The notes below the pieces were generated by a model that saw only the letters and a list, made by a program, of their open reading frames with translations, did not search any database and had not been told where the DNA came from. Positions 37,297 through 52,889 of a DNA stretch of 64,000 bases are shown here, one piece after another. The position numbers and the translations under genes were made by a program. The DNA is taken from IMG/VR virus record IMGVR_UViG_3300030107_006644, positions 124,001-188,000 of that record, one strand, 5' to 3'. Position 1 is the stretch's first letter, and every line of letters starts with the position of its first letter.

Positions 37297-37434
37297 ATGG
37301 CTAAGAAGAAAATCAAAACCATCAAACCTCGCAACTGGCTGGCGCTTCATGCCCGTCGTCGTCGCGGTGGTCCGATGAGGGATCGAAAGAAGGCAGCGAA
37401 CAAGAAGGCATGCCGTGGGAGAGTCCATGCATAA
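37297..37434 (+). CDS. Highly basic 45-aa microprotein (not in ORF track)
   Basis: MAKKKIKTIKPRNWLALHARRRRGGPMRDRKKAANKKACRGRVHA; GGAGA SD. Confidence 0.6.
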   Translation: MAKKKIKTIKPRNWLALHARRRRGGPMRDRKKAANKKACRGRVHA

Positions 37435-37747
37435 GAAGCTGATCGGAGCACTCGTTCGGTTCTTGCCTGTTGGCAACTATCATGAGTTTCACAATGCTGT
37501 GGGTATGGTGACTTCGCATAATAAACCTTCACATGTTCGCGTCAAGTGGATCAAGCCTGTTCACTATGCCGTTCACAGCGAACACTACAAGTTTCATGGA
37601 CCGGCGACGGTTTCGGACTTTGACCTCGACCGGCTTGAAGTGATCAGTAGCGTACTTAGTGACGAGCAGCTTGAAAGCGTTGTCGGTGGTATGAGTCCAG
37701 AAAGTTTTAGTAACTGGCGAGCGGAGAAGTTAAATGAAAGTCGGTGA
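37427..37747 (+). CDS. GDLV-like protein with a C-terminal double-glycine-leader-like extension
   Basis: LIGALVRF...VGMV...VRVKW...LEVISS followed by LSDEQLESVVGG. Confidence 0.65.
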   Translation: MHKKLIGALVRFLPVGNYHEFHNAVGMVTSHNKPSHVRVKWIKPVHYAVHSEHYKFHGPATVSDFDLDRLEVISSVLSDEQLESVVGGMSPESFSNWRAEKLNESR

Positions 37748-37904
37748 TTTGGTTTGGATTGATTGGAATAGTTACCCAGAAGAGGCGTTCACTGCATCCG
37801 GCGTTATCATTAAGGATGAGGGATTTAGCTTCTTTAGGGTCTTGTTTAACGGTGAGCAGAGGGTTTTCCATTCTGATTATCTGGAGGCACTCAATGAAGC
37901 ATAG
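37734..37904 (+). CDS. GDLV-family microprotein (56 aa, not in ORF track)
   Basis: MKVGDLVWIDWNSYPEEAFTASGVIIKDEGFSFFRVLFNGEQRVFHSDYLEALNEA. Confidence 0.7.
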   Translation: MKVGDLVWIDWNSYPEEAFTASGVIIKDEGFSFFRVLFNGEQRVFHSDYLEALNEA

Positions 37905-38082
37905 TGGTGCGCCGAGTGTGGGCGATCTCGTTGTGGCGCTCTATGACGAGCAGCGAGGACTCAAGTGTATCGGCCTTGTTTTAGATTGCCGAGGTATTGA
38001 GTGTCGAATCAAGTGGGCTTCGCGCAGCGACCCTATTGGGTGGTGGAGAAGAGATCAGTTAAGGGTTGTGCATGCCGCTTGA
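37894..38082 (+). CDS. GDLV-family microprotein
   Basis: PSVGDLVV...IGLVLD...RIKW...QLRVV. Confidence 0.65.
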   Translation: MKHSGAPSVGDLVVALYDEQRGLKCIGLVLDCRGIECRIKWASRSDPIGWWRRDQLRVVHAA

Positions 38083-38135
38083 AGTCTTGGCAATAATGGT
38101 TATTTGGATATGTTTTTGGATATTAAGGGAGAAGT

Positions 38136-38339
38136 ATGAAAGTCGGTGATCTCGTTATTATGCCTGATCAGAAGCTGCTGAAGGATGAGCCTGTACCTAT
38201 TGCCGTCGTGCTGCAAACAAAGCATGATGGCATCAACCGAGGCACAAGCCATAAGCGTGTTAGGGTTCACTGGATTCAAGATAATGAAAGATCATGGGAG
38301 CCTGTGAAGTGGCTGGAGGTAATCAGTGCGGTTAGTTAG
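38136..38339 (+). CDS. GDLV-family microprotein
   Basis: MKVGDLVI...VRVHW...WLEVISAVS. Confidence 0.7.
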   Translation: MKVGDLVIMPDQKLLKDEPVPIAVVLQTKHDGINRGTSHKRVRVHWIQDNERSWEPVKWLEVISAVS

Positions 38340-38658
38340 AGACATAAAGTTAGTTAGAGATTTAATCCCTCGCATCATCGAGGAGGAAGGAGGCACATGC
38401 AACAGTCGCACGGTTCACGGGGTCGATGAACACCTTGTCTTTCTTAGAGTCAAGATGATCGAAGAGGTGAATGAGTTTATTGTGGATCCATCTTATGAAG
38501 AGGCTGCAGACATGTTAGAGGTTCTAAAAGCCTTTTGTTTATTAAATGGCTTGGATTTTGATACCGTGGTCAGCACGGCGCAAAGCAAACAAGAGGAGCG
38601 CGGAGGATTTCATCGCGGAGTCATCTTGCAGGAGGTAACAAACAGTGAAGATCGGTGA
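38326..38658 (+). CDS. MazG/PRA-PH-like nucleoside triphosphate pyrophosphohydrolase
   Basis: KLVRDLIPRII, KMIEEVNEF, EEAADMLEV, K.EERGGF. Confidence 0.85.
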   Translation: MRLVRDIKLVRDLIPRIIEEEGGTCNSRTVHGVDEHLVFLRVKMIEEVNEFIVDPSYEEAADMLEVLKAFCLLNGLDFDTVVSTAQSKQEERGGFHRGVILQEVTNSEDR

Positions 38659-38851
38659 CTTGGTAAGATGGTGCGGAAAAATCTGCGTTGTTACGGAGGT
38701 TTATGAAAGCAAGATATGGCGCACCGACAAAATGGGAAAGATGGTGCGTTGGGGAGAGATTGAACCCGAGCCTTTCGCCCGAATCTTGCTTGGCGATGAG
38801 CTGCGTGGTGTGCCGCAAACGGACCTAGAGGTAGTCAGTGGGTGCAGCTAA
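38645..38851 (+). CDS. GDLV-family microprotein
   Basis: MKIGDLVRW...DLEVVS. Confidence 0.7.
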   Translation: MKIGDLVRWCGKICVVTEVYESKIWRTDKMGKMVRWGEIEPEPFARILLGDELRGVPQTDLEVVSGCS

Positions 38852-39090
38852 ATGTAACCATACTTCCCGGCGATCTGCTATGGCAGTTGCGACCTCCGCA
38901 CGGAGTCTGCCTATTGTTGGAGATAAAAGACCTTCCACAAGACGTTCGCTCAATGAAAGGCTGGATTTCTCAAGACTATCCAGTATACAGACTATTACAT
39001 CAAGCTGGGTTCATTTTTGAGGATCCCCATTACTATTACGAGAAGTTAAACCTTAGCCGACAGGAGAAACAAGATGGCAACTTGTATTAA
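38842..39090 (+). CDS. GDLV-like microprotein
   Basis: ILPGDLLW...YRLL. Confidence 0.5.
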   Translation: MQLNVTILPGDLLWQLRPPHGVCLLLEIKDLPQDVRSMKGWISQDYPVYRLLHQAGFIFEDPHYYYEKLNLSRQEKQDGNLY

Positions 39091-39271
39091 ATGTGAAGAA
39101 GAATATAACGATAAGCGACTAGCCCTAGGCTACCGCACATGCTTGGACTGTGGCGGTCGCGATGCCAACAGGATCAGTCGAGCGAGAACAGCACAGGTTC
39201 TCAAGTCAATGACGCCAAATCATTATGAAGGTAGTCCCGAAGACCTGTTCGATAAGCCCGACGAGTCTTGA
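39074..39271 (+). CDS. Small C4 zinc-finger protein
   Basis: CIKC...RLALGYRTCLDC. Confidence 0.65.
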   Translation: MATCIKCEEEYNDKRLALGYRTCLDCGGRDANRISRARTAQVLKSMTPNHYEGSPEDLFDKPDES

Positions 39272-39322
39272 CATTTACTTGACAACTGCACCCTTGACTT
39301 TCCCGGTCAGGGGTGCTATATT
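39268..39322 (+). promoter_or_regulatory. Triple-TTGAC early promoter, copy 4
   Basis: TTGACA(39268), TTGACA(39279), TTGACT(39294)-17 bp-TATATT(39317). Confidence 0.85.
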
Positions 39323-39516
39323 ATAGGGGTAATCAGCAAGGAGTATACAGTGAACTTGACAGAAGATGAAATCGTTGACCTGATCGACTGCGTTAACAAT
39401 CGCATTGATGACCTGATGGACTGCGCCATGTTTGGCGATGCCGTCGAGATTGAGAGCGAGATTGAGAGGATGAATGAACTATCAACTAAACTTAGCGAAG
39501 CATTGGAGGCTTAAAC

Positions 39517-39882
39517 ATGGGCTATCGTTCAACAGCTATTCTCGCGGTCAGCAAAGAGGCTCGACCGTATCTTATGCACTTTCTCGGTAAAACACCGGCT
39601 GCTATGGAACTTTGTTTCGGACCACATGCGGATCGTACCGAAGACTTCCAAGGCGAAGAAGGGTCGGTCATGTTTCGTTTCGACAGCATTAAGTGGTACG
39701 AGGGCTATAAGGAGATCGACGCTATCGAGTCCTTCATGAGCCACATGGACTGCGACGAAGCAGAAGAACTGGGCGAGGGATGCGAGCATTATCGCTTTGT
39801 ACGTACTGGCGAAGAGTACGAGGATATTGAACAGCGTGGTTATGCCTTTGACATTCACCCGTCAGTCGGTATCGAGTATTAA
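39517..39882 (+). CDS. Phage hypothetical protein
   Basis: MGYRS start, IKWY, YRFVRTGEEYEDIE; GGAGG SD. Confidence 0.7.
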   Translation: MGYRSTAILAVSKEARPYLMHFLGKTPAAMELCFGPHADRTEDFQGEEGSVMFRFDSIKWYEGYKEIDAIESFMSHMDCDEAEELGEGCEHYRFVRTGEEYEDIEQRGYAFDIHPSVGIEY

Positions 39883-40100
39883 AGTTAAAGGTTGATAACA
39901 GGATCATAACATGAAGTATACAATACCGCAAGCAGGATCGATGATCGGCGCTCTCGCTACTGGTGAGAACATCAAAGGGATTCAGATCGTTGTCGAGTAC
40001 AAGTGTGACGCGAAAGGCGAGTGGATTCGATTCATTAAAGATCCACCAGATCATTGGTGGGATCTTAGCAATATAAACATTATTTCAAAGAAGGAACAGA

Positions 40101-40373
40101 ATGGCTAACTTAGCATTTTCAGGAGAGAAGGTATCGCAGGACGAGGTGAAGAAAGCGTTGATGGCTATTTTAGCCGAGGACTGGCCCGAAGCCTTTACCG
40201 TAGACTTTCATTCAGACGGTGGAGGATCGGTGGTTCGCGCCATCGTCGAATGTCACAACACCGACGATCATTTAGACAAGTCCTTGACTGACAAGCTGCC
40301 ACTTAAGTTTATGGGATGGCGACTTGTGATATTAAAGGTTCCTATTGGTCATGTTGGAGTCTTTTACTCCTGA
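40101..40373 (+). CDS. Hypothetical protein
   Basis: ORF with SD; its stop codon lies in the next promoter repeat. Confidence 0.55.
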   Translation: MANLAFSGEKVSQDEVKKALMAILAEDWPEAFTVDFHSDGGGSVVRAIVECHNTDDHLDKSLTDKLPLKFMGWRLVILKVPIGHVGVFYS

Positions 40374-40424
40374 CATTCTCTTGACAACTTTGCTATTGAC
40401 TTCGACCCTCGCAGGTGCTATATT
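40370..40424 (+). promoter_or_regulatory. Triple-TTGAC early promoter, copy 5
   Basis: CTGACA(40370), TTGACA(40381), TTGACT(40396)-17 bp-TATATT(40419). Confidence 0.85.
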
Positions 40425-40449
40425 ATATGAGTAACCAAGGAGAGTACAC

Positions 40450-40794
40450 ATGGCCTATCTCACGAAAGACGATCTCGTAATCATTCGCACAAGCGACACC
40501 ACCATTCAGGCGCGTGTTGTAGACATGCAGTTTCGGCGCTTCAAGCGTTCATGGCAGGACAAGAAGACTGGTGAGTGGAAATACCGATGGAAGTCCGTGC
40601 CTTATGCGATTTGCGAGTGCTTCATCGGCGCTCCTGTCGGTACAGAGTTCTTGATTCCCGGCTATAAGCTGAAGAGTGAGGTCAAGAACGGAGAAAGTCT
40701 GCTTGTTCTCCGCGACAAGTATGCAGCCGAGTTCGATGGCGAGTGGGTAAGTAAGATGTTGGCCGAAAGCAAGGCCAAGCGAGCTAGTGCGTGA
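40450..40794 (+). CDS. Hypothetical protein
   Basis: AAGGAG SD directly after the promoter. Confidence 0.7.
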   Translation: MAYLTKDDLVIIRTSDTTIQARVVDMQFRRFKRSWQDKKTGEWKYRWKSVPYAICECFIGAPVGTEFLIPGYKLKSEVKNGESLLVLRDKYAAEFDGEWVSKMLAESKAKRASA

Positions 40795-40955
40795 AAGTCG
40801 GTGATCTGGTAAAGTATAGACGCAACGCGGTAGACGCTGGTGTGGGCATCGCTCTCATCGAGGGTGCCAATGCGCGGTGGACGATTCTGTGGTCAACCGG
40901 CGTGAGTGAGATCGTTAGAGAAGAAAACTTGAAGGTGATCAATGAAAGTCGGTGA
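40791..40955 (+). CDS. GDLV-family microprotein (54 aa, not in ORF track)
   Basis: MKVGDLVKYRRNAVDAGVGIALIEGANARWTILWSTGVSEIVREENLKVINESR. Confidence 0.75.
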   Translation: MKVGDLVKYRRNAVDAGVGIALIEGANARWTILWSTGVSEIVREENLKVINESR

Positions 40956-41121
40956 TATAGTAACTTGTAGCTACGGTATTGGCATGGTGGCAGCAAAGGC
41001 TTTGCAGCATGACGGCCCGCTATTCCGTATCATATTCAACGCTTTCCCAGAGCGCAAGATATGGGTTCGCCCGTGGGAACTGGAGGTAATCAGTGCAAGT
41101 CGGCGATCTGGTCAAGTTTGA
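40942..41121 (+). CDS. GDLV-family microprotein (59 aa, not in ORF track)
   Basis: MKVGDIVTCSYGIGMVAAKALQHDGPLFRIIFNAFPERKIWVRPWELEVISASRRSGQV; junction TGA is CGA here. Confidence 0.7.
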   Translation: MKVGDIVTCSYGIGMVAAKALQHDGPLFRIIFNAFPERKIWVRPWELEVISASRRSGQV

Positions 41122-41281
41122 AACTAACTCATGGGTGATGCAGCGGGACGACTATGCAAATCCCGGTGTGATCGTGGAAGACGTGTCTGGCGTGAGCACC
41201 CGACGCTACCGAGTCATGTGGGCCGATCAGAGAATCACGGTCGAACATGAAGGTTATCTTAAACCTTTGACATCTTCTTGA
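41093..41281 (+). CDS. GDLV-family microprotein
   Basis: MQVGDLVKF...PGVIV...YRVMW. Confidence 0.75.
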   Translation: MQVGDLVKFETNSWVMQRDDYANPGVIVEDVSGVSTRRYRVMWADQRITVEHEGYLKPLTSS

Positions 41282-41320
41282 CAAGATCCGCTTGACTTCC
41301 ATGCTCGCCCATGCTATATT
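41267..41320 (+). promoter_or_regulatory. Triple-TTGAC early promoter, copy 6
   Basis: TTGACA(41267), TTGACA(41278), TTGACT(41292)-17 bp-TATATT(41315). Confidence 0.85.
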
Positions 41321-41342
41321 ATATGGGTAATCAGGGAGAGAT

Positions 41343-41525
41343 ATGATTAAGGTTGGCGATTTGGTAAGGATAGCGGAGCCCTTCATGGGCTATCAGGGTC
41401 AAGTGGGTATCGTTACAAAGATCCCGCTGACCGAGCGTGGCATGTGGGCTATCCTGCTCACATCCGGCGAGCTTATCGCCACGAGGCTTATGTCACGTAT
41501 GGAGGTCGTCAATGAAAGTCGGTAA
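41343..41525 (+). CDS. GDLV/KOW-like microprotein
   Basis: IKVGDLVRIAEPFMGYQGQVGIV (KOW-like)...MEVVNESR. Confidence 0.75.
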   Translation: MIKVGDLVRIAEPFMGYQGQVGIVTKIPLTERGMWAILLTSGELIATRLMSRMEVVNESR

Positions 41526-41691
41526 TCTAGTAAGTGTGAAGCGCACTCATGGCCGAGAGCCTGTCATCGGTGTTATCATCGAGATCAAGGAAGACGAACA
41601 CAATCGAGTCGCACTTGTTGAGTCTATTAAAGGTAACTATCGGCTTTATGCTAACCCTCTCGACATCGAGGTGATAAGTGACTGTCGGTGA
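41512..41691 (+). CDS. GDLV-family microprotein
   Basis: MKVGNLVSV...IGVIIEI...DIEVISDCR. Confidence 0.75.
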   Translation: MKVGNLVSVKRTHGREPVIGVIIEIKEDEHNRVALVESIKGNYRLYANPLDIEVISDCR

Positions 41692-41896
41692 TCTCGTTAA
41701 AGTTACACGCGCATCCATCGGCGTGCCTGTTGGGACATTGGGTCTAATCATGTCCTCGCATGAAACCCGTGGAGACTATGATACTGCGTCGGGCGAGAAG
41801 ATTCACATACTGCAGCTTATTGGAGGTGATTTTGCATGGGGGCAGAACCGTCGTTATTTGGGGAGAGACTTGGAGGTAATCAATGCAAGTCGGTGA
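41678..41896 (+). CDS. GDLV-family microprotein
   Basis: MTVGDLVKV...LGLIM...DLEVINASR. Confidence 0.75.
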   Translation: MTVGDLVKVTRASIGVPVGTLGLIMSSHETRGDYDTASGEKIHILQLIGGDFAWGQNRRYLGRDLEVINASR

Positions 41897-42056
41897 TTTG
41901 GTGAGGAACCGTAACTCTGAGGGCGGCCTGCTGGGTATTATTGTGGGCTGGCAGGATCTCAGTTATGAGGGTTTGCAGCCTATTATACACTGGTTCGACG
42001 GGCGCACAAGTTGGATTATGGCGCATCGCGTGGAGGTCATCAATGCAAGTCGGTAG
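41883..42056 (+). CDS. GDLV-family microprotein (57 aa, not in ORF track)
   Basis: MQVGDLVRNRNSEGGLLGIIVGWQDLSYEGLQPIIHWFDGRTSWIMAHRVEVINASR. Confidence 0.75.
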   Translation: MQVGDLVRNRNSEGGLLGIIVGWQDLSYEGLQPIIHWFDGRTSWIMAHRVEVINASR

Positions 42057-42252
42057 TCTATACAGGTTTGACCGTATCAACGGTCACACAACAACCGTGA
42101 ATGGCCGGTTGGCGATTTATTTGGGCGAAGCCTTCATCCGTCGAGACGATGGCGTGACCATCGAGAACCACAGGGTTTTGATGGTTGGGAACACAAGCCC
42201 GACGATCATTGATCGCGGCCTGCTGAAGCACATGCGAGAGGTGACAGCATGA
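42043..42252 (+). CDS. GDLV-like microprotein
   Basis: MQVGSLYRF...LAIYLG...HRVL...MREVTA. Confidence 0.7.
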   Translation: MQVGSLYRFDRINGHTTTVNGRLAIYLGEAFIRRDDGVTIENHRVLMVGNTSPTIIDRGLLKHMREVTA

Positions 42253-42422
42253 AAGTCGGTGATCTGGTAACACAGTCGCATGCCGGGAGTAATACAGGCA
42301 TCATCATAGCCATCGATCCCGAAGAAATCGGAGATTCAAAAGAAGTGCTGGTATTCTGGGACGATGGCGAAGTTTGGAACCATTCGATGCGGTTTCTGGA
42401 GGTGATCAGTGCAAGATCCTAG
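42249..42422 (+). CDS. GDLV-family microprotein (57 aa, not in ORF track)
   Basis: MKVGDLVTQSHAGSNTGIIIAIDPEEIGDSKEVLVFWDDGEVWNHSMRFLEVISARS. Confidence 0.75.
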   Translation: MKVGDLVTQSHAGSNTGIIIAIDPEEIGDSKEVLVFWDDGEVWNHSMRFLEVISARS

Positions 42423-42609
42423 ACCTTGGAAGGTGGGCGATCTAGTCAGGATTAAACGCACTGGTGAGACTGCGTTGATATTGTACGTTGCCGATGCGTC
42501 CATCGGCTGCAAAATGATTAAGATTCATACGGGCGAGTATTTCGCCCCTTGGAAGTTAAACCTTGTTAGCAAGGGAGCTAACAAGGTCGAAGAAGGGAGA
42601 GAGGAATGA
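42409..42609 (+). CDS. GDLV-family microprotein
   Basis: WKVGDLVRIKRTGETALIL...KLNLVSK. Confidence 0.7.
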   Translation: MQDPRPWKVGDLVRIKRTGETALILYVADASIGCKMIKIHTGEYFAPWKLNLVSKGANKVEEGREE

Positions 42610-42959
42610 TGCCGATTTGGGTTTTTATGGTTCGCTACGATGGCGAAATGGCTTGCAGTACGCACTTGACGGAGAAGGGCGCGATCCTGACCGCGATTGA
42701 AGACGTGCTGCAGTACCTTGGAGTAGAAGACGAAGAGGACGCGAAGAACATATTTAGCGAACCGAGAAGATACAGTAATGTTTCCGCAGTCGAAGCAGCA
42801 CTGAAAGAAGACGAGGTTCAACCTCCCGAATGGGATATTGGAAAGATGCAGAAGATGAATCGTGAACAACTTTATCGAGTCTATGCCGGATGGTGCGAGA
42901 AGACGTGGGATCACCACATCTACGAGTGCGAGATCATGAAAACGACGGTGACCGGATGA
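42606..42959 (+). CDS. Hypothetical protein
   Basis: Coupled to both neighbours. Confidence 0.6.
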   Translation: MMPIWVFMVRYDGEMACSTHLTEKGAILTAIEDVLQYLGVEDEEDAKNIFSEPRRYSNVSAVEAALKEDEVQPPEWDIGKMQKMNREQLYRVYAGWCEKTWDHHIYECEIMKTTVTG

Positions 42960-43279
42960 AGTTAAACCTTGAAGCTGCACCCGTCGAGGTTGTCTGGCCG
43001 CCGTGTCTCTCGACTATCGGAGGCAAGCGATATGCGATCAGCGGCAACGTCTGGATCGAAGTACCGATGTCCACCGTGTTCGACGATTTGCCTCGATATA
43101 TGGTCTGTGAGGCCCGCAAAGCCCCTGTGACGGCTCCGTGTCAGTCATGGGAGGTACAGGGTAGCAAAGGCAACAAGTACGCTGTGAGGCTGTCTGAGGG
43201 TGTCTGGTCCTGCTCATGTCCCGGCTACTCGTTCCGTCGCAAATGTCGCCATATTGAGGAAAAGAAGATTGAAGTTTAA
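42956..43279 (+). CDS. SWIM zinc-finger protein
   Basis: VQGSKGNKYAV...WSCSCPGYSFRRKCRHI (CxC...CxH). Confidence 0.8.
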   Translation: MKLNLEAAPVEVVWPPCLSTIGGKRYAISGNVWIEVPMSTVFDDLPRYMVCEARKAPVTAPCQSWEVQGSKGNKYAVRLSEGVWSCSCPGYSFRRKCRHIEEKKIEV

Positions 43280-43454
43280 GGTTGGTGACTTGGTGACTTG
43301 GAGGAATGGCCTTGCTCAACCTCCCGGTATCATATTAAAGGTTTCCACCGAAAGGCGTGCGTACCTTATTTGCTTTCCGCATAAGAGCGTCACCCAGTGG
43401 TGTCCCGACGAGTTCTTGAACCAGTTGACAACCTCTTTACAAGAAAATCCTTGA
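43269..43454 (+). CDS. GDLV-family microprotein
   Basis: FKVGDLVTW...PGIILKV...YLICF; TTG start. Confidence 0.65.
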   Translation: MKFKVGDLVTWRNGLAQPPGIILKVSTERRAYLICFPHKSVTQWCPDEFLNQLTTSLQENP

Positions 43455-43479
43455 CTTTGGGCCTGAAAGACTATATATT
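43425..43479 (+). promoter_or_regulatory. Triple-TTGAC early promoter, copy 7
   Basis: TTGACA(43425), TTTACA(43436), TTGACT(43451)-17 bp-TATATT(43474). Confidence 0.85.
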
Positions 43480-43503
43480 ATAGGGGTAACAAGGAGAGAT
43501 ACC

Positions 43504-43698
43504 ATGCAACCCGTGATTCCACTTGACAAGATTCTTGAGCGCATGCGCGAAGAGCAACAGCCCGAGCGCCCAGCTTTGCGACTGTATGCACCCGAGCCTT
43601 CACCCGGTGATCCTCGCGACCATGAGTGGCCACCACGCCGGATCGAAGAAGACGAGCAGCCCGAAAGAGGGGTTGCAATCATTGATTTCACGATTTGA
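43504..43698 (+). CDS. Small Pro/Glu-rich protein
   Basis: AAGGAG SD; ends ERGVAIIDFTI; the only gene between two promoter copies. Confidence 0.65.
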   Translation: MQPVIPLDKILERMREEQQPERPALRLYAPEPSPGDPRDHEWPPRRIEEDEQPERGVAIIDFTI

Positions 43699-43748
43699 CA
43701 TTTCCCTGACATTTTAGACTTGACTTTCTCTCTTCCCTGTGAGATAAT
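43695..43748 (+). promoter_or_regulatory. Triple-TTGAC early promoter, copy 8
   Basis: TTGACA(43695), CTGACA(43706), TTGACT(43720)-17 bp-GATAAT(43743). Confidence 0.8.
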
Positions 43749-43771
43749 ACAGGGGTAATCAAGGAGATCCC

Positions 43772-44575
43772 ATGCCCCGTGTGACCTACGCCGACCGCTT
43801 CGCTGCCCTTCTCGCCCGCCCGCTATCCAGTAGCGACCGGAGATTCTGCGAAAGTCTGCGAGACTTCTACCAGCGCAAAGGTCGCCTGACCTCTGGGCGT
43901 GTGCGGTGTTTTAAGCAGCTTGAGGAGCGTTACAGTGCCGAGAGGCTAGCCGAGGCTGCAGAGCGCGGCGGGCCGATGCTCAAGCGATTGAGCGGCCTTC
44001 TGCCCCGCGTGGAGGGCAACAAATGGGCAAGCGGATTCGTGATGAGTCTATCCCAACAAGTTCAAGGAGGGCGCAATCTCTCCGACAAGCAGATTACAAT
44101 GCTTGAAAAGATCGAGCGAGAAAACAGTGATGAAGCAATCGCAGCACGACAGACATGGCATCTTGATTATGATGACGACAAGCGTTTGCGTGCGATGGTC
44201 GCGGCTCGATACTACCGGGAGAGCGGAGGCTACTTCCGCGATCTGGTTAACAAGATTCTTGAAAACCCTGACTTCGTGCCGTCCCAGCGGCAGTACAGGT
44301 CTATCACCGAGAACAAGTATGCACAGAAGGTCTTGGATGCCCATTTCGCCGCGCCTAAGTACGCGGTCGGGTCATTCGTCGCGATGCGCTCCAGCGCACC
44401 GTGGGCATGCCGTAGCGGGGCCGGAAACAAGCCTTGCGTTGTCATCCAGACCGATGCCGCTCCTGTCGTCAGTGCAGCCCGAGGAGTCAAGCGTTACAAG
44501 GTGCTGCCCATCGGATCGGCAAGGCCGATCATTGTCGAGGAGCGACACATTAAAGCTGCGAGAGGACTTAAATAA
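43772..44575 (+). CDS. Hypothetical protein, paralogue of 19155..19772
   Basis: Shared C-terminal region; internal duplicated F..SL...Q..GR.L(T/S) helical unit. Confidence 0.75.
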   Translation: MPRVTYADRFAALLARPLSSSDRRFCESLRDFYQRKGRLTSGRVRCFKQLEERYSAERLAEAAERGGPMLKRLSGLLPRVEGNKWASGFVMSLSQQVQGGRNLSDKQITMLEKIERENSDEAIAARQTWHLDYDDDKRLRAMVAARYYRESGGYFRDLVNKILENPDFVPSQRQYRSITENKYAQKVLDAHFAAPKYAVGSFVAMRSSAPWACRSGAGNKPCVVIQTDAAPVVSAARGVKRYKVLPIGSARPIIVEERHIKAARGLK

Positions 44576-44578
44576 CCA

Positions 44579-44745
44579 GTGCGGCCCCACCACATATATA
44601 ACTAAAGGTGGGATTCAATGCCTTGAGTGAATCCACTGCGCTCCACCAGTCCCTTTGCGGGATGAGGACGTGAACCCGAGAGGGAGTCGAAACAAGGCTG
44701 GCGAGGAAGACGCGGTAAGGACAGCGATCATCGGTGGGGCCGCAC
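44579..44745 (+). ncRNA. Candidate structured non-coding RNA (~167 nt); strand assumed from flanking genes
   Basis: Perfect 13-bp closing stem GTGCGGCCCCACC/GGTGGGGCCGCAC; internal stems GGATTCA/TGAATCC, CTGCG/CGCGG, CCAG/CTGG, GAC/GTC; CCC-GAGA-GGG GNRA hairpin; intergenic. Confidence 0.6.
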
Positions 44746-44783
44746 CCCCTTCAACTTAAACCTTTGAACTTTTGAGAAAACAC

Positions 44784-45182
44784 ATGAAAGTAGAACTGAC
44801 CGACATTGAGATTATCCACATTATGAACGCGCTTAAGCTGACAGCCAACAAGCTCCGCGAAAAGCACTCGATTTCTGGTGACATGGAGCAAGCCGATCTT
44901 GCCGACGAACTTGAAGAGATCGAGTTTGACTTGTTTGAGGCTGTCAATCGACGCGATGACGACTGGCTAGCCGACCGAGACGATCCCACAGACCTTATGG
45001 GCCAAACGCTCTCAGAGCCGGATGCTGCCCTTTCATTCGTGCAGGCAGGCATTGACGCCCGCGAGCAAGTTAAAGGTTCCTCAATGGCCGCACAACGCCG
45101 GGAAGAGCAGGTTAAGCGCATGATGAAAGGTACAGCCACACCACGCGATCCTGACTTCATGAATGATCCGGTGGACTGGTAA
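44784..45182 (+). CDS. Acidic hypothetical protein
   Basis: ORF ends just before promoter copy 9. Confidence 0.6.
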   Translation: MKVELTDIEIIHIMNALKLTANKLREKHSISGDMEQADLADELEEIEFDLFEAVNRRDDDWLADRDDPTDLMGQTLSEPDAALSFVQAGIDAREQVKGSSMAAQRREEQVKRMMKGTATPRDPDFMNDPVDW

Positions 45183-45194
45183 ATCAAACCTCTC

Positions 45195-45249
45195 TTGACA
45201 TTCTCTTTACAACTTTAACCTTGACTTCCTCACTCATATCGGCTATATT
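45195..45249 (+). promoter_or_regulatory. Triple-TTGAC early promoter, copy 9
   Basis: TTGACA(45195), TTTACA(45206), TTGACT(45221)-17 bp-TATATT(45244). Confidence 0.85.
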
Positions 45250-45294
45250 ATAAGGGTAAGAACGAGTTGAACCCCCTGACTTTGGAGATTTTAC

Positions 45295-46077
45295 ATGGGT
45301 AACTATTCTGGAACTATTCGATGCGGTCACTGTTACGAGCGAGGCCACAATCGGGCTGGCTGCGAGAAGCTGACCGAGCAACTTGCTACACAATGGAGTC
45401 GCATCGAGACTGCGGGGTATGATGATGACAACTATACTCATAAGCGCACCCGTCAAATGCTAGCCAAGCGTCAGGGGTCTGACCCTCTCACTGGTGAGAG
45501 CACCCGCAAGCGTCGGGCGACCTACGGAGGCCGCAAGTGCTCATACTGCGGCGAGCCGGGTCACACTCGTCGCACTTGTCCGTCGATGAAGACTGACAAA
45601 CAGAACTATCGCACGTTGACTGCAGCATCGCGCTCGACCCTCATTGAACGCATGCGCGAGCATGGTTTCGGACCCGGCTCGCTCTTGACTACCGTGTCAA
45701 AGGATTGGGAGGATGGCGAGTACAAGACCCGCACGGTCCCGATGATTGTCAAGTCCGTGGACTGGGAAGCGATCCACCAACGGACATGGGGCAGTCAGGG
45801 TCAGGGTGGCCCCGAATGTGTCACAGTGCTCCGCATGAATGATAGCCGCATCGTTCAGATTATGCTTCCTAACTGCGTTACAGGCTACGATCCTAGCTGG
45901 AATCGCGTTGAGCTTGCTGGTCGAGTAGAGGACGTGCAGCCTCCCGCTGGATGGCTCGATGCATCGGAACTCGACTCCAAGACCATGGGCCAAGTGGTCG
46001 AACTCTTTGAAACTGGGGTTGCCCGCGACTACTACTGGTGGCAGCGACAGCCCGAAATAGAAGGACAGGAAGGTTAA
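45295..46077 (+). CDS. Protein with two CCHC zinc knuckles
   Basis: CGHCYERGHNRAGC and CSYCGEPGHTRRTC, both exact CX2CX4HX4C. Confidence 0.8.
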   Translation: MGNYSGTIRCGHCYERGHNRAGCEKLTEQLATQWSRIETAGYDDDNYTHKRTRQMLAKRQGSDPLTGESTRKRRATYGGRKCSYCGEPGHTRRTCPSMKTDKQNYRTLTAASRSTLIERMREHGFGPGSLLTTVSKDWEDGEYKTRTVPMIVKSVDWEAIHQRTWGSQGQGGPECVTVLRMNDSRIVQIMLPNCVTGYDPSWNRVELAGRVEDVQPPAGWLDASELDSKTMGQVVELFETGVARDYYWWQRQPEIEGQEG

Positions 46078-46084
46078 ACCTTTC

Positions 46085-46139
46085 TTGACATTCTCTTGAC
46101 AACTTCGCTATTGACTTTTCCTCTCCCCTGTGGGATAAT
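46085..46139 (+). promoter_or_regulatory. Triple-TTGAC early promoter, copy 10
   Basis: TTGACA(46085), TTGACA(46096), TTGACT(46111)-17 bp-GATAAT(46134). Confidence 0.85.
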
Positions 46140-46168
46140 ACAGGGGTAATCGAGCAAGGAGCTATCCG

Positions 46169-46729
46169 ATGACTGACACGCCGACCACTTCTGACCTTCG
46201 CGCCCTCAAGCTGACCGAGGACGAATGGCACTCACTCATGCACATGGGTGAGTTTGATCCTATTCGCGCTCACATGGATATGCTTGTGCTGGCTGGGCTT
46301 GCCGTGCGAACGCACATTCACCCGCCCGAATGGGATCTGACCGAGGCCGGTCACGCAGCCTGCAACGCGATTGATCTCATCCTCGACTGGGATGACTTTG
46401 TATTCGTAGGCGACGGAGAGGACACCGAGCCTTTCGGCGTTATTCAGCTTGAGAACGCTTCTGATGCCTCTGATACGGTCTTCCTGAATGGTGAGCCTAT
46501 CGAGCGCAGCGAAGCCGTAGAACTGGCTTCTGAGGCCCCTAAGCGCATCGGCGTAGGATCGCTTGTGCGCCACCAGCACCACGGCGAAGGTCTAGTGACC
46601 GATCATTTCATGTGGGATGGCGACTGGGGCGGCTTCAGGATTAAACTTCTTAAACCTTCCCAAACTGGCGCTACAACCTCGATTACCGAGTTTAGTGACC
46701 GCGCCGATTCCTTTGAACTTGTAAGTTAA
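46169..46729 (+). CDS. Hypothetical protein: wHTH-like N-terminus and SH3-like C-terminus
   Basis: LVLAGLA...WDLTEAG; IGVGSLVRHQHHGEGLV...FELVS. Confidence 0.6.
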   Translation: MTDTPTTSDLRALKLTEDEWHSLMHMGEFDPIRAHMDMLVLAGLAVRTHIHPPEWDLTEAGHAACNAIDLILDWDDFVFVGDGEDTEPFGVIQLENASDASDTVFLNGEPIERSEAVELASEAPKRIGVGSLVRHQHHGEGLVTDHFMWDGDWGGFRIKLLKPSQTGATTSITEFSDRADSFELVS

Positions 46730-46736
46730 ACCTCTC

Positions 46737-46791
46737 TTGACATTTACTTGACAAGATAATCCTTGACCTTTTACCCCCACCGTGCTATATT
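46737..46791 (+). promoter_or_regulatory. Triple-TTGAC early promoter, copy 11
   Basis: TTGACA(46737), TTGACA(46748), TTGACC(46763)-17 bp-TATATT(46786). Confidence 0.85.
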
Positions 46792-46840
46792 TATAATGTG
46801 AGCGAGGGATGAACCCTCGCCTTGACCTAGGAGTCCTATC

Positions 46841-47908
46841 ATGGCTGTCGATTTCGCCACTTTCCGTTCTGTCGTTCCTCATGTCACTGCTGCCCGCTTC
46901 CCCGTGCTCTTGCGCGGTCGTCACGGTGTCGGTAAATCACAGGTTGTTTATCAGCTTGCAGGCGATCTCGATCTCCCCGTTGTGGAGCGTCGAGCTTCGC
47001 AAATGACCGAGGGCGATCTTCTCGGCCTTCCGTCTACCGATGGCGCGACCACCCGATGGAACCCGCCTGTCTGGTTTAAGACCGCGTGCGAGACTCCTGT
47101 TGTGCTCTTTCTGGATGAGGTTGACCGTGCGACGGTCGAGGTCCGTCAGGGCATTTTCGAGTTGACCGATAGCCGCAAGCTGGCTGGGTTCTCGCTCCAT
47201 GAGGACACGATCATCATCGCAGCCGTCAACGGTGGCGAACATGGCGCTCAATATCAGGTCGGCGAAATGGACCCGGCAGAGCTTGACCGCTACACGGTCT
47301 TCGACGTTGAGCCTTCCCATGAGGATTGGCTTGAGTGGGCGAAGTCTAACGTCGATGGCGTCGTTTGGGACTTCATCAACAACAATCGGAACCACCTTGA
47401 GCACGCTGGCGACTTTGAGCCGAACAAGGTTTACCCTTCCCGTCGTTCGTGGGATCGGCTCAATCAGGCTGCGACTGGTGCGGCTCTCTTTGAAGAGGGT
47501 GCCGATCTCGGTCTGCTCTACAACCTGACTTGCGCGTTTGTCGGCTTTGAAGCTGGCGTTGCGTTCAAGGACTTCGTTGAGAACTATTCCCGTCAGGTCA
47601 CTGTCGAGGATATTTTGGTCAAGGGTGAGATTGACCGTACCTCCGAGTTCACGATCAACGAGCACAGTGCTTTGGTCGAAAAGATGGAGGCAACCGAGAC
47701 TTTCGCGGATCACCTGCCTTCCGAGCAGATTCAGAACCTCGCTGATTTCTTCGTCACGCTGCCTTCTGAAGTTGCTATGAAGCTGTGGACCGTCATGGGT
47801 AACGGCGAGATCCAGAACACTGTCGATCTCCACCAGTCCACTGCGTCCGATGGTCGCTCCGTGTCTGGATACCTCGTTGAGCTTCTGACCGGCGAGGCAG
47901 CAAGTTAA
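46841..47908 (+). CDS. MoxR-like AAA+ ATPase
   Basis: Walker A GRHGVGKS, GDLLGLP, Walker B LFLDEVDRA, MDPAELDRY, PSRRSW. Confidence 0.9.
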   Translation: MAVDFATFRSVVPHVTAARFPVLLRGRHGVGKSQVVYQLAGDLDLPVVERRASQMTEGDLLGLPSTDGATTRWNPPVWFKTACETPVVLFLDEVDRATVEVRQGIFELTDSRKLAGFSLHEDTIIIAAVNGGEHGAQYQVGEMDPAELDRYTVFDVEPSHEDWLEWAKSNVDGVVWDFINNNRNHLEHAGDFEPNKVYPSRRSWDRLNQAATGAALFEEGADLGLLYNLTCAFVGFEAGVAFKDFVENYSRQVTVEDILVKGEIDRTSEFTINEHSALVEKMEATETFADHLPSEQIQNLADFFVTLPSEVAMKLWTVMGNGEIQNTVDLHQSTASDGRSVSGYLVELLTGEAAS

Positions 47909-47917
47909 ACCTTGAAC

Positions 47918-47938
47918 GTCCCCCGCTTGTCGGGGGAC
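47918..47938 (+). terminator. GC-rich hairpin after the ATPase gene (possible terminator)
   Basis: GTCCCCCG-cttgt-CGGGGGAC, flanked on both sides by TTAAACCTT. Confidence 0.5.
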
Positions 47939-47949
47939 TTAAACCTTTC

Positions 47950-48004
47950 TTGACATTCTCTTGACAACTTTGCCCTTGATTTTTTCGCTCCAGCGTGCTA
48001 TATT
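47950..48004 (+). promoter_or_regulatory. Triple-TTGAC early promoter, copy 12
   Basis: TTGACA(47950), TTGACA(47961), TTGATT(47976)-17 bp-TATATT(47999). Confidence 0.85.
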
Positions 48005-48027
48005 ATATGTGTAGTAAGGAGATTTCT

Positions 48028-50973: not shown

Positions 50974-52608
50974 ATGGCAGAATGCAGAGAATGTGGCGGT
51001 CCGATTCCGCCCAAGAAGACGAGCCGAGGGCCAAAGAAGAAGTATTGCAGTGAAAGATGCATGGATTTGTGGCACTACAAAAACGGAAAGCACAAATATG
51101 TGAAGAAGAACCCAAATTGGGGTAGTCTAACGCCAAAGCGAGAGGCCGAAAGGAAAAAGAGGCGAGAAGAGTACGAATGGTACAGCCAAAATTGGCTAAC
51201 AGCGACAGATCTTGGCGATCACTTGGGGATTCACCCGACAGGAGTGTTCCACAGGGCCAAAAAGCTTGGAATAAGACCCAAAATTGTGTTGTGGAGCGGT
51301 AAGAAGTCGTTCTACAGCCCAGAACAGGCCAAACAGATCGAGGAGGAGTATTTAGAAACACCGATTCCAGAAGGATTTCTAAAAAAGGTAGATGCAGCAG
51401 AGTACATATCCATGGCGGAGGGTACATTTGACTGGTATGTTCTTAAAAGAGAGATAGTACCCAGCATGGAATGGCAACAGACGCATGGTCAGAGAAATAA
51501 ATGCTTTCTATATAGCGTAGAATCGTTAGACGAGTTCCAAGAGGGTATGGATGCCAAGAGAGCCGAGAGAGCCGCTGTACGGGAAGCTAGGGCTGCTGAA
51601 AGAGAGGCGAGGGAGGTCGCCCGAGTAGAGGCTACTACGGGTAGGCTGACCATGCAACAGGTAGCTGCGCTTCATGGAGTCTCAGTAACCACTGTTCTTA
51701 AGTGGGTTAACCACGGTTTGGTGCCGTATGTTACGTTTAGCGGAGTTTATTACATCGATGAAGACGGTGTGCAAGAGAAGCCGTTTGTCATAAAGGAACA
51801 CACACCTTCTCAAACCCTCACTGATGAGGAGCGGCGATTGAACGAAATGTTCACGGCTATAGAACGTAGCAAAAACATATCTTCTGATTATGATATGGAG
51901 AGGCAACACCAACGTGAGCGAACAGAAGAGCTTAGTAGAAGGCAGAAGGAGCGTTGGAAAGATCCGAATGTCAAGTTTAGGATCCTTGTTGCAAATGCCA
52001 TTAAGGGCGATATCAAGAAAAATACGAAGGATCGGTACTTCCGCTTAGCGGTAAGAGATAGCTGGAAAGCGCTTAAAGAGAAGTGCGGGTATGACTGTGC
52101 TGCTCTTATCAAGCATATCGAGTCGCAATTTACCGATGAAATGAATTGGGATAACCACGGAAGGGTTAAAAAGGAAGGAGAAGGCTTTACATGGCAAATA
52201 GATCACATTAAGCCTCGCTCTGCTTTTAAATATACAAGCGTCGACGACCCTAAATTCGCTGAATGTTGGAGTTTAAATAACCTTAGACCGCTCGATGCAA
52301 GGCTCAACCTGTCTAAAGGTAGTGATAGTGAAGATAAGAAACCCACTTTAAAGCCCTCAAACGACAGAAAAAAATTCTCGCAAAAAAATTCGGCGCCGTT
52401 TTTGGCTTCTCCCTACAAGGATTACCTACATCCTTCGGAAGTTGCGCACAAACTTGACGTCTGTGAAGACACTGTGCGTAGATGGATACGTCAAGGAAAA
52501 ATTTCTGCCGCGAAAATTGGCAATGCGCTTTACATTCACGAAGATAATGTCGAGCGGCCGGCCCGTCGCGCGTGGGGATCGGTCCGAAAAGTCGACTACA
52601 GGTACTGA
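50974..52608 (+). CDS. Multi-HTH (excisionase/MerR-like) protein with HNH endonuclease domain
   Basis: N-terminal CRECG..KYCSERC; HTH_17-like LTMQQVAALHGVSVTTVLKWV and LHPSEVAHKLDVCEDTVRRWIRQG; HNH HIESQF..MNWDNHG..WQIDHIKP..LNNLRPL...NLSKG. Confidence 0.8.
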   Translation: MAECRECGGPIPPKKTSRGPKKKYCSERCMDLWHYKNGKHKYVKKNPNWGSLTPKREAERKKRREEYEWYSQNWLTATDLGDHLGIHPTGVFHRAKKLGIRPKIVLWSGKKSFYSPEQAKQIEEEYLETPIPEGFLKKVDAAEYISMAEGTFDWYVLKREIVPSMEWQQTHGQRNKCFLYSVESLDEFQEGMDAKRAERAAVREARAAEREAREVARVEATTGRLTMQQVAALHGVSVTTVLKWVNHGLVPYVTFSGVYYIDEDGVQEKPFVIKEHTPSQTLTDEERRLNEMFTAIERSKNISSDYDMERQHQRERTEELSRRQKERWKDPNVKFRILVANAIKGDIKKNTKDRYFRLAVRDSWKALKEKCGYDCAALIKHIESQFTDEMNWDNHGRVKKEGEGFTWQIDHIKPRSAFKYTSVDDPKFAECWSLNNLRPLDARLNLSKGSDSEDKKPTLKPSNDRKKFSQKNSAPFLASPYKDYLHPSEVAHKLDVCEDTVRRWIRQGKISAAKIGNALYIHEDNVERPARRAWGSVRKVDYRY

Positions 52609-52646
52609 AATTGCAAGGCTACTACTTAATAGAAGGGAGTGGCTTG

Positions 52647-52889
52647 ATGAACAAGGGCGATCTTGTATGGTGGTACGACTTGTATGATGATGATATCGTC
52701 AAAGACGCCGGTTCCGGAGTTGTCTTAGAGTCCAAGACATGGCGCTATGATAGTGAACCCGAGAGGGGCCCGAATTTCTCATCGAACATAATACGAACGA
52801 TTCATCGTGTGTATAAGTTTAAAACATGTAATGAAGACTGGTATACTGAATCAAATTTGGAACTTCTTTCAGAAAAAACAGAAGATTAG
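52647..52889 (+). CDS. GDLV-family microprotein
   Basis: MNKGDLVWW...GVVLE...HRVY...NLELLS. Confidence 0.6.
   Translation: MNKGDLVWWYDLYDDDIVKDAGSGVVLESKTWRYDSEPERGPNFSSNIIRTIHRVYKFKTCNEDWYTESNLELLSEKTED

What the first reader, a model, noticed from the sequence alone, without database searches (positions are those of the whole stretch)
44579..44745. Candidate novel structured ncRNA with a hammerhead-like GAUGAG...CGAAA core
Seen: an intergenic ~167-nt element closed by a perfect 13-bp stem (44579-44591 with 44733-44745). It contains a GGATTCA/TGAATCC hairpin and a long interrupted stem (CTGCG/CGCGG, CCAG/CTGG, CTTTG/CAAG). That stem encloses GGAUGAG-GAC...CCC-GAGA-GGG...GUC-GAAAC, with a GNRA tetraloop. 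The GAUGAG-stem-CGAAAC arrangement resembles the hammerhead core but lacks the canonical CUGA and an evident cleavage triplet. It is followed by a TTAAACCTT site and lies ~550 nt from the zinc-knuckle gene. Inference: a regulatory sRNA, a variant ribozyme or a protein-decoy RNA.
Basis: partly seen in the sequence, partly recalled or inferred. Interest (0 to 1): 0.7.

Follow-up and report, generated by a model that had tools for sequence, protein, structure and literature searches.

The report
New pseudoknotted RNA of marine jumbo phages
The flagged 167-base stretch is a real copy of a previously undescribed, strongly conserved folded RNA found in more than a hundred uncultured marine giant phages, often next to their tRNA and tmRNA genes; it is not a hammerhead ribozyme and its job is still unknown.

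Summary
The element is real and is more than chance. The window is part of a 205.5-kb marine phage record. Homologues were found at 139 distinct sites in related phage and marine metagenome contigs. Every hit from the model searches lies on the gene strand, and none of the 30 sites checked is spanned by a credible ORF.

- **P1:** a long closing helix with different letters in every phage.
- **P2:**
- **PK1:** a 6-bp pseudoknot between the P2 loop (GCCUUG) and CAAGGC downstream.
- **Variable insert:** it holds the CCC-GAGA-GGG hairpin and the "GAUGAG" letters.
- **P4:** a hairpin with a conserved 10-nt loop.
- **PK2:** a 2-bp contact between the P4 loop and the invariant UGGCGA strand.

On 50 sequences, 95.6% of pair cells are paired, against 68.7% when shuffled (0 of 500 shuffles reach the observed value).

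Rfam 15 has no match.

Copies often sit just upstream of phage tRNA or tmRNA genes on the same strand. A diverged second copy in this genome lies before its tmRNA.

Best reading (inferred): a small stable RNA cut from polycistronic transcripts that acts in trans. A ribozyme, an aptamer or a cis-acting role remain possible.

The parts
44579..44591 (+). P1, 5' arm of the closing helix
   Evidence: It forms 13 perfect pairs with 44733-44745. In 37 homologues the arms are 8-21 bp long with unrelated letters, and the stem beats 100 shuffles in nearly all of them.
44592..44610 (+). J1/2, an A/U-rich joiner holding the semi-conserved ..CUAAAGG.. motif
   Evidence: Alignments A7 and A9.
44611..44634 (+). 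P2 hairpin: stem 44611-44616 with 44629-44634, and a 12-nt loop AAU-GCCUUG-AGU
   Evidence: All 6 pairs show changes on both sides (GGGUUC/GAACCC, AGCGCG/CGCGCU, CCUUCA/UGAAGG). 97.6% of cells are paired.
44620..44625 (+). PK1 5' strand (GCCUUG, inside the P2 loop)
   Evidence: It pairs with 44693-44698. First found by RNAalifold. It was not part of the search model, yet 95.7% of cells are paired and all 6 pairs covary.
44635..44684 (+). Variable insert. It ends in the small P3 hairpin CCC-GAGA-GGG (44675-44684) and contains the "GAUGAG-GAC" letters.
   Evidence: The region between P2 and AGU is 5-76 nt long across homologues. It is only 5 nt in L168 and L196.
44685..44692 (+). Conserved joiner AGUCGAAA (consensus AGUYGAAA)
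   Evidence: A7 and A9.
44693..44698 (+). PK1 3' strand (CAAGGC)
44699..44706 (+). Conserved strand UGGCGAGG. G44701 and C44702 form the PK2 contact with the P4 loop.
   Evidence: Pair types are CG 30, UA 7, GC 3, UG 1 at one position and GC 23, GU 15, AU 3 at the other. 89.1% of cells are paired.
44711..44726 (+). P4 hairpin: stem 44711-44713 with 44724-44726, and a conserved 10-nt loop GGUAAGGACA (consensus GRYRARRACA). Loop nucleotides G44715 and U44716 pair with C44702 and G44701.
   Evidence: The stem covaries (CG/GC/UA/AU) and 95.7% of cells are paired. The stem is longer in relatives, for example GAUGGCGC/GCGCCAUC in L040.
44727..44732 (+). J4/1 joiner
   Evidence: Alignment.
44733..44745 (+). 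P1, 3' arm
43720..43748 (+). Nearest upstream sigma-70-like promoter (TTGACT-17-GATAAT). It is the likely source of the transcript that carries ORF 43772-44575 and the element.
   Evidence: Consensus scan. No promoter lies between it and the element. That this promoter drives the element is inferred, not shown.

Best explanation
**What it is (shown).** This is the window's copy of an undescribed family of structured RNAs. The family belongs to a clade of uncultured marine phages of about 185-205 kb. It is read from the + (gene) strand.

The fold is a P1-closed pseudoknot:
- The loop of hairpin P2 pairs with six bases downstream (PK1).
- The invariant strand that follows (UGGCGA) touches the conserved loop of hairpin P4 (PK2).
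- An insert of free length and sequence sits between P2 and PK1.

**How it most likely works (inferred).** It has no promoter of its own here, so it is made as part of a longer early transcript. The long closing helix and the A/U-rich flanks would let host nucleases trim it to a discrete, stable small RNA. This is how tRNAs, tmRNA and the T4 stable RNAs are released from shared precursors. The invariant pseudoknotted core would then bind one specific partner in trans. The neighbouring genes suggest a factor of translation or RNA processing, but the partner is unknown.
For: **A family exists**
- An iterated nhmmer search found about 24 copies.
- Model R1 gave 30 hits at E <= 6e-5 in 86 loci, all on the + strand.
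- Model R2 hit 19 of 24 related phage records.
- R2 confirmed 64 of 80 fetched marine metagenome loci.
- In all there are 139 distinct copies.

**Structure**
- On 50 sequences, 95.6% of pair cells are paired against 68.7% when shuffled. The covariation score is 0.70 against 0.215, and 0 of 500 shuffles reach it. Partners slid by 1-3 columns give 34-44% paired.
- PK1 was not in the search model and still covaries.
- Frequent G-U pairs on the + strand would be A-C mismatches on the other strand. This points to RNA read from this strand.
- P1 arms differ completely between phages but stay complementary.

**Not coding**
- No credible ORF spans any of the 30 sites checked.

**Stable-RNA context**
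- 36 of the 139 copies have a tRNA or tmRNA gene within 1.5 kb. All 36 are on the same strand, and in 32 of them the gene lies downstream of the element.
- Spacers can be as short as about 11 nt, as in L277, where P1 is followed by tRNA-Leu.
- The diverged "type 2" copies lie upstream of the phage tmRNA gene in 8 of 8 cases, and 18-27 nt before it in three.
- This genome has a type 2 copy at G000:C1:194929-195050, ahead of its tmRNA at 195888-196224.

**No fixed downstream gene**
- Copies follow the 267-aa ORF, follow the DUF2201/VWA gene, or sit inside tRNA clusters.
Against: - No expression data exist. No listed RNA run holds the stretch, and four metatranscriptomes laid on it gave nothing. 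Transcription, processing and stability are therefore all inferred.
- P1 here is only 13-14 bp, which is short for a classical RNase III site.
- No partner was identified. The zinc-knuckle protein does not track the RNA. The upstream 267-aa protein is present in all 24 genomes, so it is uninformative. The complex prediction was not folded.
- About 30 near-invariant unpaired bases around two pseudoknots would suit a catalytic or ligand-binding pocket just as well.
Confidence: 0.45

Rival explanations
1. It is a new self-cleaving or otherwise RNA-processing ribozyme. It would cut polycistronic transcripts at operon ends and ahead of tRNA and tmRNA genes.
For: - A compact double-pseudoknot core carries many invariant unpaired bases.
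- The element sits at places where transcripts need cutting: 18-30 nt after stop codons, and about 11-65 nt before tRNA or tmRNA genes.
- From general knowledge: small ribozymes (hammerhead, twister, HDV-like) are common in phage genomes, and some sit next to tRNAs.
Against: - No ribozyme family in Rfam matches.
- No conserved candidate cleavage site could be named.
- A long P1 would hold the cleavage products together.
- Host RNase P already makes tRNA and tmRNA 5' ends.
- New ribozyme classes are rare.
Confidence: 0.17
2. It is a ligand-binding aptamer. It would act either as a riboswitch or as an excised RNA "sponge" for a host metabolite or signalling nucleotide.
For: - The helix order matches the SAM-I riboswitch. 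This comparison is from general knowledge: P1, then a P2 whose loop pairs with the joiner before the last hairpin, then P4 and P1'.
- The invariant joiners would be typical of a binding pocket.
Against: - There is no consistent downstream gene and no expression platform.
- Most copies in the early region are followed by a fresh promoter.
- P1 is far longer and more stable than a switching P1.
- No riboswitch model matches.
Confidence: 0.12
3. It is a cis-acting transcript element. It could be an exonuclease barrier or insulator at the 3' end of a transcription unit. It could also be an RNA that makes RNA polymerase resistant to termination across untranslated tRNA and tmRNA genes.
For: - Copies upstream of the ATPase sit right after a stop codon, with a strong promoter 25-80 nt downstream.
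- Other copies sit at the head of untranslated tRNA or tmRNA genes.
- The element is always co-oriented with transcription.
Against: - There are only 1-3 copies per genome, while this window alone has nine or more such promoter units.
- A simple barrier would not need two covarying pseudoknots and about 30 invariant bases.
- Most copies lack a U-tract after P1.
Confidence: 0.15
4. It is a hammerhead-type ribozyme variant.
For: Only the letters GAUGAG...CGAAAC in this one copy.
Against: - No hammerhead model hits at E <= 10.
- The core letters lie in the variable insert and are absent from homologues.
- The proposed stems conflict with PK1 and P4.
Confidence: 0.01
5. It is a DNA-level inverted repeat, such as a MITE, an origin or a recombination site, or a chance palindrome.
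For: - It has perfect 13-bp terminal inverted repeats.
- The position varies between genomes.
- Both strands fold well.
Against: - The arms change letters freely while keeping complementarity.
- Internal helices use many G-U pairs, which work on the + strand only.
- All model hits lie on the gene strand.
- There is only one full copy in the window.
Confidence: 0.02

Closest known systems
T4 small stable RNAs, species 1 and 2 (rnaC, rnaD)
   Same: They are phage-encoded RNAs of about 120-140 nt with still-unknown function. They lie in a tRNA gene cluster, a few bases from a tRNA, and are co-oriented with it (annotation). This is the closest analogy for genomic setting and for the likely way the RNA is made.
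   Different: There is no homology: model R1 scores at most 5.5 bits anywhere in the T4 tRNA region. T4 rnaC ends in a tRNA-like T-arm. The present RNA has no T-loop, and ARAGORN finds no tRNA or tmRNA in the window. T4's RNAs lie downstream of the tRNAs, whereas these lie mostly upstream.
SAM-I (S-box) riboswitch aptamer
   Same: The order of helix strands is the same: a P1-closed junction in which the loop of P2 forms a pseudoknot with the joiner between the last two hairpins. This comparison is from general knowledge.
   Different: - No sequence or model match to RF00162 or the SAM-IV and SAM-I/IV families.
- J1/2 is long.
- The middle hairpin is dispensable.
- There is an extra P4-loop contact.
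- It is not upstream of methionine or SAM genes.
Hammerhead ribozyme
   Same: A GAUGAG...GAAAC letter pattern in this one copy.
   Different: The core, the helices and conservation all fail.
Pistol and other small pseudoknotted self-cleaving ribozymes
   Same: A hairpin loop forms a 6-bp pseudoknot with a downstream strand. These ribozymes are common in phage-related DNA (general knowledge).
   Different: No Rfam match. The size and the conserved letters differ. No cleavage site is known.
tmRNA (RF00023) and its precursor leader
   Same: Type 2 copies sit 18-27 nt, or a few hundred nt, upstream of phage tmRNA on the same strand, with a shared promoter in some.
   Different: It is not part of tmRNA. 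The tmRNA model starts after the element. Five related genomes have tmRNA without a nearby copy. The window's own copy is 27 kb from the tmRNA gene.

Membership tests
Hammerhead ribozyme | Conserved core CUGANGA ... GAAA plus a cleavage triplet (UH) | tested here: not met
   The window has GGGAUGAG with no CUGA and no triplet. These letters are absent from homologues.
Hammerhead ribozyme | Three helices around the core, kept by covariation | tested here: not met
   The proposed stems lie in a variable insert and clash with PK1 and P4, which do covary.
Hammerhead ribozyme | Match to the Rfam hammerhead covariance models | tested here: not met
   No hit at the gathering score or at E <= 10.
Hammerhead ribozyme | Site-specific self-cleavage | not testable with these tools
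   This needs an in vitro transcription and cleavage assay.
Any Rfam 15 family (4227 models) | Score at or above the family's gathering threshold on the element | tested here: not met
   The window has 0 matches. At E <= 10 the region gives only chance snoRNA, miRNA and lncRNA hits. In 17 homologous loci only the neighbouring tmRNA and tRNA genes hit.
SAM-I riboswitch | Pseudoknot between the P2 loop and the joiner before the last hairpin, inside a P1-closed junction | tested here: met
   PK1 has this topology. This is a likeness of topology only.
SAM-I riboswitch | Conserved core sequence or model match, and a position upstream of sulfur or methionine genes | tested here: not met
   No model match. 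The flanking genes are phage ORFs, tRNA and tmRNA.
Riboswitch (generic) | A fixed position in the 5' leader of functionally related genes, with an expression platform | tested here: not met
   The element occurs in at least four different contexts and is often followed by a new promoter.
T4 rnaC/rnaD stable RNAs | Sequence and structure homology | tested here: not met
   R1 with filters off scores at most 5.5 bits on the T4 tRNA region.
T4 rnaC/rnaD stable RNAs | Lies in a phage tRNA cluster, co-oriented and closely spaced | tested here: met
   True for 36 of 139 copies, though not for the window's own copy.
tRNA / tmRNA | Cloverleaf with T-loop, or tRNA-like domain plus tag ORF | tested here: not met
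   ARAGORN finds none in the window. The tmRNA model aligns only downstream of type 2 copies.

The most novel reading that the evidence does not exclude
The invariant double-pseudoknot core is an active site. On this reading the RNA is a new class of small ribozyme, or a small-molecule aptamer, that jumbo phages place ahead of their tRNA and tmRNA genes and inside early operons. It would process or protect stable-RNA precursors, or capture a host signal molecule.
Probability: 0.25. Interest if true: 0.9.

Novelty: categorically new. Interest (0 to 1): 0.68.

Why it matters
Complex RNA folds that are conserved across many genomes have often turned out to be ribozymes, riboswitches or cores of RNA-protein machines.

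This one has two covarying pseudoknots, about 30 invariant unpaired bases and 139 distinct copies. It is abundant in marine metagenomes and seems confined to one clade of uncultured giant phages. Those phages also carry tmRNA, tRNAs and GroEL.

Its tie to stable-RNA genes points to an unknown phage function in translation or RNA processing.

"Categorically new" refers to the family and its fold. The function has not been demonstrated.

The minimal forms (about 90 nt plus P1) are small enough for direct cleavage, ligand-binding and structure work.

Tried and rejected
- **Rfam:** run at gathering and permissive thresholds on the window and on 27 homologous loci. Only neighbouring tRNA and tmRNA genes hit.
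no hits.
- **Synteny via the upstream ORF:** five relatives lack the element at that place.
- **GenBank phages:** blastn of 2.4 kb found no match. The best protein match to a cultured phage is 30% identity.
- **A 22-nt repeat of the P3 region at 52753 and 54881:** both lie inside ORFs, so this is taken as chance.
- **A kissing interaction between the P2 and P4 loops:** checked by hand on 15 sequences and not supported.
- **Likeness to RNase P helix P4 and to HDV-like topology:** considered from memory and dropped, because the strand order differs and no model hits.
- **T4 rnaC/rnaD homology:** none.
- **Zinc-knuckle protein as partner:** its presence does not track the RNA.
- **The 267-aa ORF:** virus-only hypothetical protein with a weak SH3/KOW-like C-terminus. 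It is universal in the clade, so uninformative.
- **SmpB:** absent from this genome.
- **Bacterial genomes:** a degenerate pattern gave 39 hits, about the number I estimated for chance. The only real one is a phage contig of this clade binned into a MAG.
- **RNA evidence:** no listed run holds the stretch, and four metatranscriptomes gave no contigs.
- **Complex prediction with the upstream protein:** the job was not folded, so it is no evidence either way.
- **Literature searches:** no description found.

Full report
**Setting.** The window is G000:C1:124001-188000 of a 205,517-base virus record. It encodes ribonucleotide reductase, a large DNA polymerase and GroEL, plus a MoxR-type AAA ATPase next to a DUF2201/VWA protein. 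The record also carries tmRNA and four tRNAs outside the window. DNA runs that hold the stretch are marine metagenomes. No cultured phage is close: there is no blastn match, and the best ATPase match is 30% identity to Vibrio jumbo phages. The region around the finding is an early-type region on the + strand with repeated sigma-70-like promoter arrays.

**The observation.** The 13-bp closing stem, the GGATTCA/TGAATCC hairpin and the CCC-GAGA-GGG hairpin are all in the sequence as stated. The element starts 4 nt after the stop codon of ORF 43772-44575. It ends 38 nt before the ATG at 44784. The + strand folds to -69 kcal/mol (z = -3.8). The - strand folds nearly as well (z = -3.7), so energy alone does not settle the strand or the function. 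Rfam 15 gives nothing for the whole window, and only chance hits at E <= 10. There is no tRNA or tmRNA in the window.

**Homologues.**
- Five relatives of the upstream ORF lack the element at that position.
- A related 203-kb phage (G001) has a homologue elsewhere in its genome. Its 11-bp closing stem has entirely different letters (GGCCCCUGGAG/CUCCAGGGGCC).
- Eighty loci were fetched with the ATPase as a handle. An iterated nhmmer search on them found about 24 copies.
- A covariance model built from 8 sequences (R1) found 30 copies at E <= 6e-5, all on the gene strand.
- A second model (R2) hit 19 of 24 whole phage records, several with two or three copies.
- A degenerate pattern of the conserved 3' half found 34 IMG/VR stretches. 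Seventeen were on contigs not seen before, and R2 confirmed the element on 12 of them.
R2 confirmed 64 of the 80 fetched loci.
- In 185,579 prokaryote genomes the pattern gave 39 hits, about the number I estimated for chance. The only real one lies on an 84-kb contig with the same ATPase-VWA gene pair, binned into a "Legionellales" MAG.
- Counting distinct sequences over everything fetched gives 139 copies.
- None of the 30 sites checked is spanned by a credible ORF.

**The fold.** Six bases of the P2 loop pair with six bases just 5' of the invariant UGGCGA. Examples: GCCUUG:CAAGGC in the window, GCUUUG:CAAAGC, GUCGCC:GGUGGC, GAUUCU:AGAAUC and GACUCC:GGAGUC. This pseudoknot (PK1) was left out of the search models, so its support is independent of them.

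| Alignment | Cells paired | Shuffled | Covariation score | Shuffles reaching it |
|---|---|---|---|---|
| A7, 30 sequences | 98.0% | 68.7% | 0.73 vs 0.21 | 0 of 500 |
| A9, 50 sequences | 95.6% | 68.7% | 0.70 vs 0.215 | 0 of 500 |

On the 50-sequence alignment, partners slid by 1-3 columns give only 34-44% paired. Per helix, the paired shares are P2 97.6%, PK1 95.7%, P4 95.7% and PK2 89.1%. The P2 and P4 columns were fitted to the model, so they lean towards it.

PK2 is a 2-bp contact found by an all-against-all column scan. It joins the G-C of UGGCGA to loop positions 2-3 of P4. Pair types are CG, UA, GC and UG at one position and GC, GU and AU at the other.

P1 was scored separately. In 37 copies the best stem between the flanks is 8-21 bp long, and few or none of 100 shuffles reach it in nearly all. 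The arm sequences are unrelated between phages.

Many pairs are G-U on the + strand. These would be A-C mismatches on the other strand, so the selected structure is RNA read from the + strand. A + strand of single-stranded DNA cannot be formally excluded.

The stretch between P2 and the conserved AGUYGAAA joiner is 5-76 nt long. It usually ends in a small hairpin (P3), but it is only 5 nt long in L168 and L196. The window's insert, with P3 and the "GAUGAG-GAC" letters, is therefore dispensable.

P1, P2 and P3 stand. The long interrupted stem does not:
- Its 5' strands (CUGCG, CCAG, CUUUG) lie in the variable insert.
- CAAGGC belongs to PK1.
- CGC belongs to P4.

The hammerhead idea fails every testable criterion (see the membership table).

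**Context.** Copies occur in four settings.
- **(a) After the 267-aa ORF.** They sit directly after homologues of the 267-278-aa ORF or after small ORFs, upstream of the ATPase. A strong promoter usually lies 25-80 nt downstream and none lies just upstream. In five relatives the 3' arm of P1 overlaps the first TTGACA box of that promoter array.
- **(b) After the DUF2201/VWA gene,** 13-40 nt before the next ORF in several cases.
- **(c) Upstream of tmRNA.** A diverged "type 2" form has a P4 loop such as GAGCGAGGAGGA or GCGAAGA. It lies upstream of the phage tmRNA gene on the same strand in 8 of 8 cases, and 18-27 nt before it in L104, L150 and L154. A sigma-70-like promoter lies ahead of it in L149, L150 and L154. 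This genome's type 2 copy is at 194929-195050 and its tmRNA at 195888-196224.
- **(d) In or at the head of tRNA clusters.** Of the 139 copies, 36 have a tRNA or tmRNA within 1.5 kb. All 36 are on the same strand and 32 lie downstream of the element. In L277 only about 11 nt separate P1 from tRNA-Leu.

Five genomes have tmRNA without a nearby copy. The link to tmRNA is therefore frequent but not obligatory. The window's own copy is of kind (a), except that a 132-aa ORF lies between it and the next promoter at 45221.

**Interpretation.**
- Shown: this is a conserved RNA family with a defined double-pseudoknot fold, sense-oriented and non-coding. It is confined, as far as I could search, to one marine phage clade, and is often clustered with stable-RNA genes.
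- Inferred: it is transcribed within longer RNAs and released as a stable small RNA that works in trans.

Three points favour this reading. There is no fixed neighbouring gene. The spacing to tRNA and tmRNA genes is typical of tRNA gene clusters. And P1 is long and free in sequence, which isolates the fold from its flanks. The closest analogy is T4's rnaC and rnaD, but there is no homology.

The invariant core would fit a ribozyme or an aptamer equally well, and I cannot tell these apart by computation. I give the stable trans-acting RNA reading 0.45, a ribozyme 0.17, a cis-acting transcript element 0.15, an aptamer 0.12, and the remaining readings less than 0.05 together. That the family and its fold are real I hold at about 0.97.

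**Limits.**
- There is no RNA-seq support.
- The complex prediction was not run by the tool.
- Shuffle controls do not remove phylogenetic signal. The slid-partner control and the model-independent PK1 cover that weakness only partly.
- The pattern scans detect only copies that keep the 3' consensus, so the distribution is a lower bound.
- Absence from bacteria is only as good as that one pattern.

**Novelty.** Nothing in Rfam 15 and nothing in the searchable literature describes this family.

Noticed in passing
G000:C1:194929-195050 (outside the window; L155 1501-1622), with tmRNA at 195888-196224 and tRNA-Arg, Leu, Lys and Gly at 197763-199744: The same genome holds a diverged second copy ("type 2") of the RNA upstream of a phage tmRNA gene (tag ANNNNHFDSVRLAA) and a small tRNA cluster. 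No SmpB gene was found in the genome.
   Followed up: yes
window 35084-48021 (e.g. 45192-45264, 46082-46154, 47947-48019): There are at least nine repeated promoter arrays. Each has three TTGACA-like boxes about 13-17 nt apart, then TATATTATA and GGGTAA, roughly one per kilobase ahead of short early ORFs. The triple -35-like arrangement is unusual and unexplained.
   Followed up: partly
window 13859, 31651, 41260, 44757, 46075, 46727, 47940, 49236, 50173, 50313 (+ strand): The motif TAAACCTYT occurs 13 times against 1.1 expected (0 of 100 shuffles reach 13), and 10 of the 13 are on the + strand. It usually overlaps a stop codon and sits just before a promoter array or a ribosome-binding site.
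   Followed up: partly
window 37733-43454: A tandem family of at least ten small ORFs (about 55-85 aa) start with M-K/Q-V-G-D-L-V and end with ..EVI.. . They are seen as DNA repeat families D5-D9. The C-terminus of the 267-aa ORF 43772-44575 looks similar, and a structure-atlas search gave weak SH3/KOW-like matches for it.
   Followed up: partly
L063, L030, L038, L042, L040 (relatives): The 3' arm of P1 includes the first CTTGACA box of the next promoter array, and the 5' arm includes its reverse complement TGTCAAG. The same DNA therefore serves as RNA helix and as promoter box.
   Followed up: no
L150 1557-1759 and L154 1550-1755: The Rfam permuted-tmRNA model (RF04321) scores above its threshold (60 and 47.3 bits) across the 3' part of the type 2 element plus the start of the standard tmRNA. 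It aligns P4 plus the P1 3' arm (CCCCUCCACAG) to the T-arm and acceptor 3' strand. This is probably a by-product of the real tmRNA 5' half, but it was not resolved.
   Followed up: partly
L126 (contig PBLX01000048.1, 84,552 bases, labelled Legionellales MAG SP228): A contig of this phage clade (ATPase, VWA gene and the RNA at 7135-7293) is binned into a bacterial MAG. This is either a binning artefact or a weak host hint.
   Followed up: no
L176 (136-262 and 1339-1477), L243, L213, L232, L023, L310: Some relatives carry two copies of the RNA 1-5 kb apart on the same strand. One copy always scores lower, which suggests duplication followed by divergence.
   Followed up: no
window 52753-52774 and 54881-54902: Matches of 22 nt (82-86% identity) to the P3 region of the element lie inside ORFs 52572-52889 and 53451-56651. 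They are judged to be chance.
   Followed up: yes
window 42890-43279 and 45295-46077: Two small zinc-binding proteins lie in the early region: a SWIM zinc-finger ORF and a CCHC zinc-knuckle ORF. The knuckle protein was found in 18 of 24 related genomes, independent of the RNA.
   Followed up: partly
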